IMG/VR virus record: IMGVR_UViG_3300046804_003469
Coordinates: 151,028 to 215,027 of that record
Strand: one strand, 5' to 3'
DNA length: 64,000 nucleotides
Position numbers and translations under genes: made by a program. Shown piece by piece: positions 22,994-51,991 of the stretch (positions within the stretch are counted from its first letter, which is position 1; every line of letters begins with the position of its first letter). The notes beneath the pieces were generated by a model. That model worked only from the letters and a program-made list of their open reading frames with translations, was not told the DNA's origin and made no database searches.

Positions 22994-23033
22994 TGAAAAG
23001 TGTTATTCGTATAAATAGTAATAGCACTTTTCA
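22994..23033 (+). promoter_or_regulatory. Late promoter in the loop of a hairpin upstream of HNH gene
   Basis: TGAAAAGTGTTATT / AATAGCACTTTTCA arms; TATAAATA at 23010-23017. Confidence 0.75.
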
Positions 23034-23040
23034 CCAACTT

Positions 23041-23538
23041 ATGTCATATACAAAAGAACAAAGAATTGAGTATAATAAAAAATACTATGAAAATAGGAGT
23101 GATGAGCAAAAAGAACTAAAACGCCTTGCTGATAGGGAATATTATTACAAAAATAAAGAAAAATGCAATAAAAGGCATTTAGAATATTATGAAACCAATA
23201 AAGAAAAACTAAAAAAACAGAATACTGAAAACAATAACAAAAGACGACAAAAACTAAAAGAGGAAGCAAAACAAAAACTTGGTGGAAAATGTGTATGGTG
23301 TGGAGCAACTGAAAACCTTGAATTTGACCATATAGACCCAGCACAAAAACAATTTACCATAAGTGCCTTTCCTTGCTCTCTTGAATTATGGTGGAAAGAG
23401 GTTGAAAAATGTCGCCTATTATGCAAAACCTGCCACAAAAAACATAGTGATGCTGAAATGGCAGCAAAACATCTTTATTGGGTAAATCTTTCTTTTGATG
23501 AACGACAAAAACTCATTCAGCAGCAACTTGACCAATAA
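23041..23538 (+). CDS. Free-standing HNH homing endonuclease
   Basis: CVWCG...LEFDHIDP...CRLLCKTCHKKH; charged helical N-terminus. Confidence 0.88.
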   Translation: MSYTKEQRIEYNKKYYENRSDEQKELKRLADREYYYKNKEKCNKRHLEYYETNKEKLKKQNTENNNKRRQKLKEEAKQKLGGKCVWCGATENLEFDHIDPAQKQFTISAFPCSLELWWKEVEKCRLLCKTCHKKHSDAEMAAKHLYWVNLSFDERQKLIQQQLDQ

Positions 23539-50866: not shown

Positions 50867-50948
50867 GGGTAGGTTTCCGAGTGGTTAAAGGAATCTGACT
50901 GTAAATCAGACGGCTCTGCCTTCACTGGTTCAAATCCAGTCCTGCCCA
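50867..50948 (+). tRNA. tRNA-Tyr(GUA)
   Basis: GGGTAGG/CCTGCCC acceptor, TCTGA-CTGTAAA-TCAGA, long variable arm. Confidence 0.95.
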
Positions 50949-50949
50949 C

Positions 50950-50978
50950 TTGACAATCAAATCCTGAACTGGTATGAT
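50950..50978 (+). promoter_or_regulatory. Sigma70-type promoter
   Basis: TTGACA-17 nt-TATGAT with TGn. Confidence 0.75.
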
Positions 50979-51064
50979 TGTTTTATGGGTTTCAGAAGTC
51001 CAAATTCTGAGTAATTCCCACCCCTTCCATGCCTCTCAACGATGCACAAACAGGAAGGTCTCTT

Positions 51065-51138
51065 GGGCTAGTAACTCAGTGGAATAGAGTAACGCTCTTC
51101 TAAAGCGTGAGTCGTTGGTTCGAATCCAACCTAGCCCG
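51065..51138 (+). tRNA. tRNA-Arg(UCU)
   Basis: GGGCTAG/CTAGCCC, ACGCT-CTTCTAA-AGCGT, GTTCGAATC. Confidence 0.95.
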
Positions 51139-51155
51139 TTGTCCTTTTTTCTTTT

Positions 51156-51356
51156 ATGGACAAATACACCTTTGGTGGACAACAACCATCATCCGTTAAT
51201 CTTCTTAGACTCATTAGTGAGTTGGAAGGATCTTATCAAATGCTACACTATATGGCTTTTGAAGAAGATCGTGATATAATAGATGAAATGAAGAAGAGAT
51301 ATTATAAACTCTACTTCAAAACCGTAAAAGAAGAAAAGGCAAACATTCCCTTATAG
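51156..51356 (+). CDS. Small hypothetical protein
   Basis: 66 aa LRLISELEGSYQ...MKKRYYKLYFK. Confidence 0.7.
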   Translation: MDKYTFGGQQPSSVNLLRLISELEGSYQMLHYMAFEEDRDIIDEMKKRYYKLYFKTVKEEKANIPL

Positions 51357-51695
51357 ATTACGAATTTCGTGATGAATTTCTGAATGGCAGTTTGAACATA
51401 CTAGGATACATTTATCTAATTCTTCTTTGACTTTTTCCCAACTTCTAGTATGACCACCTTTAGACAAATAAAAATCTTTTTCTTTTGGATTTAAGTGGTG
51501 AAATTCTAATGCCCAGTGAGAACGATTATAACCACAACATTGACAAGCACCGCCTTTATACGCTATGCTATCTCTTTTAAGGTTCTTTCTTCTCTGGTCT
51601 ACATAATATTTGTTCTTGCATTGTTTAGAGCAAAATTTACCTCTACCATTGTAAATAACTGCTTCTTCTAAACATAAGTGCCAAGCACATTTCAT
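51351..51695 (-). CDS. Free-standing HNH homing endonuclease inserted in tRNA cluster
   Basis: CQCCGY...LEFHHLNP...CILVCSNCHSEIH; N-terminal Cys-rich FCSKQC; only convincing minus-strand gene; TATAAATA on minus strand at 51720-51727. Confidence 0.9.
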   Translation of the reverse strand: MKCAWHLCLEEAVIYNGRGKFCSKQCKNKYYVDQRRKNLKRDSIAYKGGACQCCGYNRSHWALEFHHLNPKEKDFYLSKGGHTRSWEKVKEELDKCILVCSNCHSEIHHEIRNL

Positions 51696-51738
51696 AAGAT
51701 TAACACGAATTGCTAATCTTATTTATAAAGTAAAACAT

Positions 51739-51811
51739 TGGGGTGTAGCTCAGCGGTAGTAGCGGGATGCTGTTAACATCTAGGTCGCAGGTTCGATCCC
51801 TGCCGCCCCAG
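51739..51811 (+). tRNA. tRNA-Asn(GUU)
   Basis: TGGGGTG/CGCCCCA, GGATG-CTGTTAA-CATCT, GTTCGATC; discriminator G. Confidence 0.92.
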
Positions 51812-51892
51812 TCGGAAGATCTGGAAATGTTCGGGTCTTCCTTGCTAAAACCTAGAGTTTTTCTAGGTCAGGGGGATGGCCTCCCCTGTTTC

Positions 51893-51964
51893 GGGAGATT
51901 AACTCAGCGGTAGAGTGGCTGCCTTACAAGCAGTAAGTCATTGGTTCGAATCCGATATTTCCCA
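51893..51964 (+). tRNA. tRNA-Val(UAC)
   Basis: GGGAGAT/ATTTCCC, GCTGC-CTTACAA-GCAGT. Confidence 0.93.
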
Positions 51965-51991
51965 CTTGCATAAATACTTTTAAAAAGTATA

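What the first reader, a model, noticed from the sequence alone, without database searches (positions are those of the whole stretch)
51341..51811. HNH cassette appears to have truncated a tRNA gene and delivered a replacement tRNA-Asn
Seen: left of the minus-strand HNH is AAACAT-TCCCTTA-TAG (51341-51356); right of it is AAACAT-TGGGGTG-TAG-CTCAG (51733 on), the start of the intact tRNA-Asn. Both have the same 6-nt lead-in, a 7-nt segment starting with T, then TAG at tRNA positions 8-10. Known: bacterial tRNA-Asn genes commonly begin TCC; T4 SegB homes in the tRNA region. Inference: TCCCTTATAG is the surviving first 10 nt of the ancestral tRNA-Asn, kept because its TAG is the stop of ORF 51156-51356 and its TTA is the HNH stop on the other strand. 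The element would carry a cleavage-resistant tRNA-Asn with a different acceptor stem.
Basis: partly seen in the sequence, partly recalled or inferred. Interest (0 to 1): 0.7.

Follow-up and report, generated by a model that had tools for sequence, protein, structure and literature searches.

The report
HNH cassette replaced a phage tRNA-Asn
In this freshwater cyanophage, a selfish HNH nuclease gene and its linked, unusually invariant tRNA-Asn gene sit where related phages carry a different tRNA-Asn, of which only the first 10 bases remain.

Summary
The letters are as described, but the 16-nt repeat (AAACATT-N6-TAG) alone is not beyond chance: 2 matches against 0.49 expected.

In 43 DUF7212-anchored cyanophage contigs, including all the closest ones, the homologue of ORF 51156-51356 (DUF7212) ends inside a TCC-type tRNA-Asn. 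Its TAG stop is tRNA positions 8-10. The window matches them through TAG (51356), then switches to the 3' end of a minus-strand HNH gene.

The new tRNA-Asn (acceptor TGGGGTG/CGCCCCA) is a phage-only allele. It is almost invariant in 76 viral contigs with very different flanks. In 34 of 77 loci an HNH lies within 500 nt, against 0 of 55 TCC-type loci. All HNH relatives of at least 52% identity lie beside a tRNA-Asn.

Caveats:
- The same kind of 10-mer sits at the left edge of HNH cassettes in other contexts, so it may have travelled with the cassette.
- Some HNH-less loci have DUF7212 fused directly to the TGGGGTG tRNA.
- The cassette is old (HNH dS 0.7-1.2).
- Cleavage specificity is untested.

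Verdict: a free-standing homing endonuclease with a linked replacement tRNA, working like T4 SegB. The ultra-conserved tRNA allele is unexplained.

The parts
51064..51139 (+). tRNA-Arg(TCT). It lies upstream of DUF7212 at the same spacing (-292) as in the TCC-type relatives (-285 to -311 in most).
   Evidence: ARAGORN; Rfam; synteny
51156..51356 (+). DUF7212 gene (66 aa, a syn9 gp25 homologue). Its last codons and TAG stop lie in the remnant of the old tRNA-Asn.
   Evidence: Pfam PF23848 4e-33; PHROG 741; alignment A1
51347..51356 (+). TCCCTTATAG, the remnant of positions 1-10 of a TCC-type tRNA-Asn. TTATA(G) is shared with the HNH 3' end and is the probable microhomology joint.
   Evidence: Collinear with the tRNA-Asn 5' ends of relatives up to TAG, then unrelated. 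No 3' part of the old tRNA is left nearby.
51351..51695 (-). HNH endonuclease gene, 114 aa: an N-terminal Cys-rich segment followed by CxxC...HH...N...CxxCH..HH. It is intact and under purifying selection.
   Evidence: PHROG 2255 2e-31. Pfam HNH scores 20.9 bits against a cut-off of 21.4. dN/dS is 0.03-0.06 against L126, L136 and L139.
51694..51738 (-). HNH leader. A late-promoter-like TATAAATA (51727-51720) overlaps the 5' arm of a 12-bp hairpin (51722-51694) that pairs with the A and U of the AUG. On the + strand this same stretch is the leader of the tRNA.
   Evidence: -15 kcal/mol, z = -2.9. The leader is 88-97% identical in L126, L129, L136 and L139.
51739..51811 (+). tRNA-Asn(GTT) of the TGGGGTG/CGCCCCA type (called Asn* in this report), a phage-only and almost invariant allele.
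51814..51841 (+). 12-bp hairpin with an AAUG loop directly after the tRNA. It travels with the TGGGGTG allele in 41 of 76 loci, and its outer stem covaries.
   Evidence: no Rfam family
51851..51886 (+). Two further short hairpins (51851-51867 and 51871-51886) of the same downstream module, ending just before tRNA-Val.
   Evidence: Read from the sequence. The module matches only TGGGGTG-set loci, at 82-96%.
51893..51965 (+). tRNA-Val(TAC), the first gene to the right of the block. In several TCC-type relatives it follows tRNA-Asn within 1-3 nt.
   Evidence: L019, L030, L047, L075

Best explanation
SHOWN. In the lineage of this DUF7212 gene, the ORF ended inside a TCC-type tRNA-Asn gene, with its TAG stop at tRNA positions 8-10. 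In this phage, everything after position 10 of that tRNA has been replaced by a block of about 536 bp (51357-51892). The block holds four things: a minus-strand HNH endonuclease gene with its own late-type promoter and a start-sequestering hairpin; a 12-nt leader; a different tRNA-Asn whose acceptor pairs 2-5 are flipped (TGGGGTG/CGCCCCA); and a conserved hairpin module. HNH genes of this clade sit beside tRNA-Asn genes in many unrelated phages.

INFERRED. The HNH is a free-standing homing endonuclease. During co-infection it cuts the 5' part of TCC-type tRNA-Asn genes. The break is repaired from the donor, copying the HNH gene together with the linked tRNA-Asn allele, which is presumed uncut. 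The right side is anchored by tRNA and downstream homology. The left side is joined at a TATA microhomology between tRNA positions 6-9 and the end of the HNH ORF. That joint leaves a 10-nt stub which supplies the stop codons of both convergent ORFs. Later loss of the HNH leaves the new tRNA behind.
For: 1; 43 DUF7212 loci, including all the closest (66-78% aa), have the ORF stop at positions 8-10 of a TCC/TGC-type tRNA-Asn. The window is collinear through TAG and unrelated afterwards.
2; on the DUF7212 tree the window is sister to an all-TCC-type clade (support 93/82). The TGGGGTG label needs at least 2 independent changes.
3; 76 contigs carry the TGGGGTG allele in at least 8 different flank contexts.
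4; an HNH lies within 500 nt in 34 of 77 TGGGGTG loci, against 0 of 55 TCC-type loci from the DUF7212 set.
5; all 13 loci whose HNH is at least 52% identical lie within about 100 nt of a tRNA-Asn, often with the HNH stop inside it. Searches show the same for Aeromonas phage 4_4572, a Hafnia phage and Lak-A2.
6; cassettes of both orientations are joined at TATA to 5-10-nt stubs that vary like real acceptor stems (TCCCT, TCCAT, TCCCC, TGCCT). HNH-less loci look like footprints of this: L084 has TTCCTTATAA directly before TGGGG, and L087 equals L095 minus the segment between GTAAT repeats.
7. HNH dN/dS is 0.03-0.06, so the protein is functional.
8. TATAAATA plus a hairpin over the AUG is the layout described for T4 homing endonuclease genes (PMC2330249).
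9; the new allele shares its D and T arms with the L020-type TCC allele but has acceptor pairs 2-5 flipped.
10; the allele is absent from 185,579 prokaryote species genomes.
11; the junction is seen in two independent metagenome assemblies.
Against: - No biochemical data exist on cleavage or resistance.
- The 10-mer also borders cassettes in contexts without DUF7212: L136 has TCCATTATAA, identical to L095, and L088 has TCCCTTATAA. The stub may therefore have been imported with the cassette rather than made here.
- The insert is flanked by an ACATT direct repeat. Deleting between the repeats would give an in-frame fusion of DUF7212 to the TGGGGTG tRNA, like L087.
- The window's other flanks (o50432, Dps, o52450) resemble genomes that already carry the TGGGGTG allele. 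Which parent was the 'recipient' is therefore ambiguous.
- HNH-filled and HNH-empty sites that both hold the TGGGGTG tRNA exist (L126 against L099 and L108).
- HNH synonymous divergence of 0.7-1.2 shows the cassette is old, not a recent invader.
- No isogenic HNH-less relative was found.
Confidence: 0.6

Rival explanations
1. An imported stub. The ancestor already had DUF7212 fused to the TGGGGTG-type tRNA-Asn, as in L087 and L097. An HNH(-) cassette that already carried an old TCC stub at its left end, as in L136, then inserted at the tRNA's 5' edge. The right side recombined by tRNA homology and the left side through the ACAT(T) microhomology. On this reading no tRNA was truncated in this genome.
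For: An ACATT direct repeat flanks the insert in the window (51343-47 and 51735-39), and an ACAT repeat flanks it in L136. The window and L136 share ACATTCCNTTATA, although L136 lies in a tRNA-Ala spacer. HNH-less DUF7212-TGGGGTG fusions exist. The window's flanks are closest to TGGGGTG-set genomes.
Against: The window's DUF7212 is 77% identical to the TCC-type clade but only 60-62% to the DUF7212 genes that abut TGGGGTG tRNAs, and it groups with the TCC clade on the tree. The tRNA-Arg(TCT)-DUF7212 synteny and spacing match the TCC clade, not L087 and L097, which have tRNA-Gly upstream. The ORF length and the -PL* ending equal those of the TCC relatives, which would be a coincidence unless the stub itself arose in a DUF7212 context.
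Confidence: 0.2
2. Recombination without homing. The tRNA cluster is a hyperplastic region shuffled by illegitimate and tRNA-homology recombination. The TGGGGTG tRNA-Asn spread because it benefits the phage, for example through decoding or escape from a host tRNA-targeting defence. The HNH is a neighbour or a domesticated nuclease, not the driver of this replacement.
For: Every segment of the locus has a different best relative. 43 of 77 TGGGGTG loci have no HNH within 500 nt. The tRNA is far more conserved than the HNH next to it, which points to selection on the tRNA itself. Phage tRNAs that defeat tRNA-cleaving defences, and a SegB role in amplifying them, are documented (PMC11555353, PMC13096335).
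Against: The association between the HNH clade and tRNA-Asn holds across unrelated phages. Joints recur at the same tRNA position with cassettes of both orientations. The count of 0 of 55 against 34 of 77 is hard to explain by neighbourhood alone.
Confidence: 0.15
3. Chance resemblance. TCCCTTATAG is simply the end of the DUF7212 ORF and never belonged to a tRNA.
For: The 16-nt pattern alone is not significant.
Against: In 43 relatives exactly these 10 positions are the start of an intact tRNA-Asn. The Pfam DUF7212 profile ends at residue 61, before these codons.
Confidence: 0.03

Closest known systems
T4 SegB, a free-standing homing endonuclease in the T4 tRNA gene cluster (PMC2330249)
   Same: The nuclease gene is embedded among phage tRNA genes. 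SegB targets tRNA gene sequence, and its preferred site is in the T2L tRNA-Asn gene. It drives inheritance of itself and neighbouring tRNA genes with loss of the recipient's markers. Its stop codon lies next to a tRNA, and translation is controlled by a hairpin.
   Different: SegB is GIY-YIG, not HNH. It recognises the conserved T-arm at the 3' end of many tRNA genes. Here the joints lie at the 5' end, around positions 6-10, of one isotype. No invariant linked tRNA allele has been described for SegB.
T5 F-TflI, F-TflII and F-TflIV, HNH endonucleases in the T5 tRNA region (cited in PMC2330249; otherwise from my own knowledge)
   Same: HNH-family genes lie between tRNA genes of a lytic phage.
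   Different: They are described as nicking enzymes. I know of no link to one tRNA isotype or to truncated tRNA stubs. Sequence relatedness was not tested here.
Intronless homing and marker exclusion by T4 MobE and SegG (PMC2790892, PMC2988022), and nuclease genes at exchange boundaries (PMC10448857)
   Same: A free-standing nuclease cuts the allele of a neighbouring gene in HEG-less phages. The donor allele differs in sequence and is co-converted.
   Different: In those cases a homologous allele is converted. Here the target gene is truncated and a complete second copy with a recoded acceptor stem takes over.
Cyanophage F-CphI at psbA (from my own knowledge, Zeng et al. 2009; not read here)
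   Same: A free-standing homing endonuclease in T4-like cyanophages.
   Different: A different target (the psbA intron-insertion site), and no tRNA is involved.

Membership tests
HNH (beta-beta-alpha-Me) endonucleases | Profile match to HNH families | tested here: met
   PHROG 2255 'HNH endonuclease' 2.2e-31, and four further HNH PHROGs. Pfam PF01844 scores 20.9 bits, just under its cut-off of 21.4. Weak PDB matches cover only the HNH modules of group II intron proteins and McrA.
HNH (beta-beta-alpha-Me) endonucleases | Catalytic His/Asn/His and two CxxC zinc pairs are present and conserved | tested here: met
   CQCCGYN...EFHH...CSNCHSEIHH is invariant in the window, L126, L136 and L139. It aligns with the HNH motif of chain 6me0_C.
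Free-standing phage homing endonuclease genes (seg/mob type) | The nuclease ORF is present or absent between conserved neighbours in related genomes | tested here: met
   The HNH is absent from all 80 DUF7212 loci. Filled and empty pairs exist: L126 against L099 and L108, and L095 against L087.
Free-standing phage homing endonuclease genes (seg/mob type) | Site-specific cleavage of the HEG-less allele, with the donor allele resistant | not testable with these tools
   Only indirect evidence: recurrent joints at tRNA positions 6-10, and flipped acceptor pairs 2-5 in the linked allele.
Free-standing phage homing endonuclease genes (seg/mob type) | Co-inheritance (co-conversion) of flanking markers with the nuclease gene | tested here: inconclusive
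   The HNH is linked to the TGGGGTG allele: 34 of 77 loci against 0 of 55. The right flank is constant while the left joints vary. However, the tRNA also occurs without an HNH, and no cross data exist.
Free-standing phage homing endonuclease genes (seg/mob type) | A late promoter overlapping a hairpin that occludes the start codon (the T4 pattern) | tested here: met
   TATAAATA at 51727-51720 and a 12-bp hairpin over the AUG. HNH(+) cassettes have TATAAATA, a hairpin and then ATG. This is sequence-level evidence only.
T4 SegB / GIY-YIG family | GIY-YIG catalytic domain | tested here: not met
   No GIY-YIG match in Pfam or PHROGs; the protein is HNH. It works like SegB but is not a member.
tRNA (Rfam RF00005), isotype Asn | Cloverleaf above the gathering score, a GTT anticodon and a G73 discriminator | tested here: met
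   55.3 bits against a cut-off of 29. ARAGORN calls Asn(gtt). The discriminator G at 51811 is read from the sequence. Rare variants are compensatory: L179, and the S-WAM2 anticodon stem.
DUF7212 (PF23848) | Full-length profile match above the cut-off | tested here: met
   113.5 bits against a cut-off of 27, covering profile positions 1-61 of 61.

The most novel reading that the evidence does not exclude
The HNH clade and the TGGGGTG tRNA-Asn form a natural 'cleave and replace' drive that polices one exact tRNA sequence. On this reading, three HNH lineages only 45-55% identical, whose own synonymous sites are near saturation, keep a single 73-nt tRNA-Asn allele identical across divergent cyanophage genomes. 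They would do so by cutting every other tRNA-Asn allele in co-infections and replacing it. The tRNA sequence would then act as the immunity mark of the element. It might also serve as a defence-resistant tRNA that pays for the element's upkeep.
Probability: 0.25. Interest if true: 0.8.

Novelty: new variant of a known kind. Interest (0 to 1): 0.6.

Why it matters
Free-standing homing endonucleases in phage tRNA clusters are known (SegB and the T5 HNH enzymes). What they do to individual tRNA genes in natural populations is poorly documented.

This locus and its relatives appear to give a series of natural snapshots of one process:
- an intact old tRNA-Asn;
- a stub plus HNH plus a new tRNA-Asn;
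- a stub plus the new tRNA after HNH loss.

They also show a single tRNA-Asn allele that stays identical while its neighbours diverge by 20-30%.

If the nuclease really selects for that allele, it would be a natural counterpart of engineered cleave-and-rescue drives. It would also explain how phage tRNA repertoires are homogenised across lineages. The system can be tested directly with a 114-aa protein and two short DNA substrates.

Tried and rejected
1. My first idea, from syn9, was that the truncated gene was a tRNA-Thr (GGCAAAC against GCCAAAC). I rejected it. Only the syn9 clade has tRNA-Thr after DUF7212, and the window's closest relatives have tRNA-Asn.
2. A 'recent sweep' as the sole cause of the tRNA's invariance is rejected. 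The neighbouring HNH orthologues have dS of 0.7-1.2.
3. A host origin for the TGGGGTG allele finds no support. The 25-mer is absent from 185,579 species genomes.
4. A search of the metagenome collection for the exact junction 19-mer gave three unrelated chance hits.
5. Intact tRNA-Asn genes starting TCCCTTATAG exist (L180, L183 and others), but not after DUF7212. They show only that this acceptor strand is natural.
6. Rfam has no family for the hairpin module after the tRNA.
7. The PDB sequence search gave only marginal HNH-module hits.
8. Laying contigs of four metagenome runs showed no HNH-less joint from 51356 to 51739. Contigs drop rare variants, so this is not evidence of absence.
9. Blastn against isolate phages found no close relative of the locus; the best match was about 70% over the Dps gene.

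Full report
WHAT IS THERE

The window is the last 64 kb of a 215-kb IMG/VR virus record rated complete. It is a T4-like cyanophage found mainly in freshwater metagenomes.

The finding lies in a tRNA cluster. The gene order is:
- tRNA-Tyr 50867-50949
- tRNA-Arg(TCT) 51064-51139
- ORF 51156-51356 (+)
- an HNH ORF 51351-51695 (-)
- tRNA-Asn(GTT) 51739-51811
- tRNA-Val(TAC) 51893-51965
- a Dps/ferritin-like gene, a small ORF and tRNA-Ser(TGA)

ORF 51156-51356 is a full-length DUF7212 protein (Pfam 4e-33), a homologue of syn9 gp25. The minus-strand ORF matches HNH endonuclease PHROGs (2e-31) and has an intact CxxC/HH/N/CxxCH..HH motif.

The 16-nt pattern occurs only at those two places, but chance alone gives 2 or more matches in 9 of 100 shuffles. 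Contigs from two different metagenome studies bridge the junction.

I fetched 80 viral contigs encoding DUF7212 and mapped their tRNAs.
- In 43 of them the ORF runs into a tRNA-Asn(GTT) that starts 9-10 nt before the end of the ORF. The TAG stop is therefore tRNA positions 8-10. These include every close relative (66-78% aa identity).
- These tRNAs begin TCCTCTA, TCCCCTG, TCCTCTG, TCCCAAG, TGCTCCA and similar.
- Most have tRNA-Arg(TCT) about 290 nt upstream, as the window does.
- None has an HNH gene within 500 nt (0 of 55 TCC-type tRNA-Asn genes).

Alignment A1 shows the window collinear with them through ...GAAGAAAAGGCAAACA(T/A)TCC..TA-TAG. It is unrelated from the next base on: relatives continue CTCAG..., while the window continues with the reverse-strand end of the HNH gene. 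No 3' piece of the old tRNA survives nearby.

On a DUF7212 tree the window is sister to an all-TCC-type clade (support 93/82). The few DUF7212 genes that abut the other tRNA type form a separate clade. The tree rests on only 70 alignment columns and the window sits on a long branch, so it is supporting evidence rather than decisive.

THE REPLACEMENT tRNA

I call the window's tRNA-Asn 'Asn*' below. Its acceptor stem is TGGGGTG/CGCCCCA.
- Its first 25 nt occur in 76 viral contigs. A search with its central 30 nt returns the same set plus one compensatory variant, TGGAGTG/CACTCCA.
- The 73-nt gene is identical in almost all of them, although the flanks fall into at least eight different contexts.
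- For the 48 nt not used in the search, mean pairwise identity is 0.96. The figure is 0.70-0.81 for twenty other tRNA isotypes in the same loci.
- The 25-mer is absent from one genome each of 185,579 prokaryote species, so this is a phage allele.
- Compared with the L020-type TCC allele, it keeps the D and T arms but has acceptor pairs 2:71 to 5:68 flipped from C-G to G-C. It also has another anticodon stem.

LINKAGE TO HNH GENES

34 of 77 TGGGGTG loci have an HNH gene within 500 nt. There are three arrangements:
- About 23 loci have a plus-strand HNH whose last codons and TAG stop are the first 10 nt of the tRNA.
- Four loci (L126, L129, L136, L139) have the window's minus-strand HNH (86-95% aa identity) with the same leader.
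- In the S-WAM2 type, the HNH lies before or after the tRNA.

The association extends outside cyanophages.
- All 13 loci whose HNH is at least 52% identical to the window's lie within about 100 nt of a tRNA-Asn, often overlapping it.
- Among isolates with nucleotide-level similarity to the HNH core, Aeromonas phage 4_4572, a Hafnia phage and Prevotella megaphage Lak-A2 have a tRNA-Asn within about 150 nt.
- Bacillus phage Anthony and E. coli phage WPEC5 have the HNH among other tRNAs.
- Lak-B1 has only one tRNA (Glu) within the 800-nt flanks, and it is not adjacent.

ANATOMY OF THE JOINTS

The right side of the minus-strand cassette is constant in all five copies: late-promoter-like TATAAATA, a hairpin over the AUG, a 12-nt leader, then the tRNA. 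The left joint differs in each.

Two pairs of filled and empty sites are informative:
- L126 against L099 and L108 (a tRNA-Ala to tRNA-Asn* spacer) differ by the HNH gene alone.
- L095 against L087 differ by a segment flanked by GTAAT repeats. That segment begins TCCATTATAA and contains a plus-strand HNH.

The plus-strand cassette begins with TATAAATA. In four of seven contexts it is preceded by TCCCT, TCCAT, TCCCC or TGCCT. These read as the first five bases of TCC-type tRNA-Asn genes fused at TATA. Some HNH-less loci keep such stubs directly before Asn*, such as L084 with TTCCTTATAA before TGGGG.

In the window, TTATA belongs both to the stub and to the native end of the HNH ORF. L136 ends TTATAA and L126 ends TTATAC. 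The joint is therefore best read as a TATA microhomology. That the stub supplies both stop codons then follows from the joint, and need not be the reason the stub was kept.

INTERPRETATION

The simplest reading is a homing-type event.
- The HNH, made by a co-infecting donor, breaks TCC-type tRNA-Asn genes near their 5' end.
- Repair copies the HNH and its linked, presumably uncut, Asn* allele.
- The HNH may later be lost.

Several observations fit this reading:
- The leader has the T4 homing-endonuclease layout: a late promoter overlapping a start-occluding hairpin (compare PMC2330249).
- The protein is under strong purifying selection (dN/dS 0.03-0.06).
- The closest characterised analogue is T4 SegB. 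It homes in the tRNA cluster, prefers a site in the T2L tRNA-Asn gene, and drives inheritance of neighbouring tRNA genes. SegB is GIY-YIG and recognises the T-arm, so this element works like SegB but is not a member of its family.
- I found no description of a tRNA-Asn-linked HNH clade in the literature searched.

WHAT REMAINS OPEN

1. Direction and place of the event.
   - The same 10-mer class borders cassettes in contexts without DUF7212. L136 and L095 share TCCATTATAA exactly.
   - The insert is flanked by an ACATT repeat.
   - DUF7212-Asn* fusions without an HNH exist.
   - The window's other flanks resemble genomes that already carry Asn*.
   - The stub may therefore have been imported with the cassette (rival 1), or the recombinant may have inherited only DUF7212 from the TCC-type parent.
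2. Age. Synonymous divergence between HNH orthologues is 0.7-1.2 while the adjacent tRNA is identical. A recent sweep cannot explain that. Three possibilities remain: every base of the tRNA is constrained, the allele is continually re-homogenised by nuclease-driven conversion, or the tRNA moves more often than the HNH. L158 may show conversion tracts ending inside the gene: it has TGGGGTG-type acceptor, D and T arms with a syn9-like anticodon arm.
3. Cleavage specificity is untested.

VERDICT

The element is a new variant of a known kind, a free-standing homing endonuclease in a phage tRNA cluster. The invariant tRNA allele is its most unusual feature.

Noticed in passing
window 51023-51059 (+): An Rfam abiF RNA motif hit (51.7 bits against a gathering score of 37) lies between tRNA-Tyr and tRNA-Arg(TCT). 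It is just downstream of a sigma70-like TTGACA-N17-TATGAT at about 50950-50985. The same spacer is 80-89% conserved in several related contigs (L147, L102, L095, L097).
   Followed up: partly
window 51814-51841 (+), and 41 of 76 TGGGGTG-type loci: A 12-bp hairpin with an AAUG/AAUA loop directly follows the tRNA-Asn. Its outer stem covaries (GGAAG/CUUCC, GAUAG/CUAUC, GAAAG/CUUUC) and its G-U pairs exist only on the + strand, so it is an RNA-level element. It matches no Rfam family. Two more hairpins follow at 51851-51886.
   Followed up: partly
L004-L083 (DUF7212 loci): In 55 of the DUF7212 loci examined, the ORF ends inside the 5' end of whichever tRNA follows: Asn, Thr, Tyr, Ala or Arg, and also Ser (L081, L082). 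The stop is often the TAG at tRNA positions 8-10. This is a recurring overlap between a protein gene and a tRNA gene.
   Followed up: partly
window 23041-23538 (+): A second HNH-like ORF (165 aa, 36% identical to the tRNA-linked one over the HNH core) has a TATAAATA 24 nt upstream, at 23010-23017. A third copy lies outside the window, at genome positions 95310-95507.
   Followed up: no
L095, L112, L116, L125, L148 (between tRNA-Arg(TCT) and tRNA-Leu(TAG)): A further HNH paralogue (48-53% identical to the window's) sits between tRNA-Arg(TCT) and tRNA-Leu(TAG), not beside tRNA-Asn. The family may have diversified onto other tRNA genes.
   Followed up: no
L158 and L179: L158 carries a chimeric tRNA-Asn: TGGGGTG-type acceptor, D and T arms with a syn9-like anticodon arm. 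L179 carries the only acceptor-stem variant found, TGGAGTG/CACTCCA, which is compensatory.
   Followed up: partly
one search hits H7-H25 (Prevotella Lak megaphages): The HNH core is 70-75% identical at the nucleotide level over about 200 nt to sequences in gut Lak megaphages, and in Aeromonas, Hafnia, Bacillus and E. coli phages. That is an unusually wide spread for one nuclease gene.
   Followed up: partly
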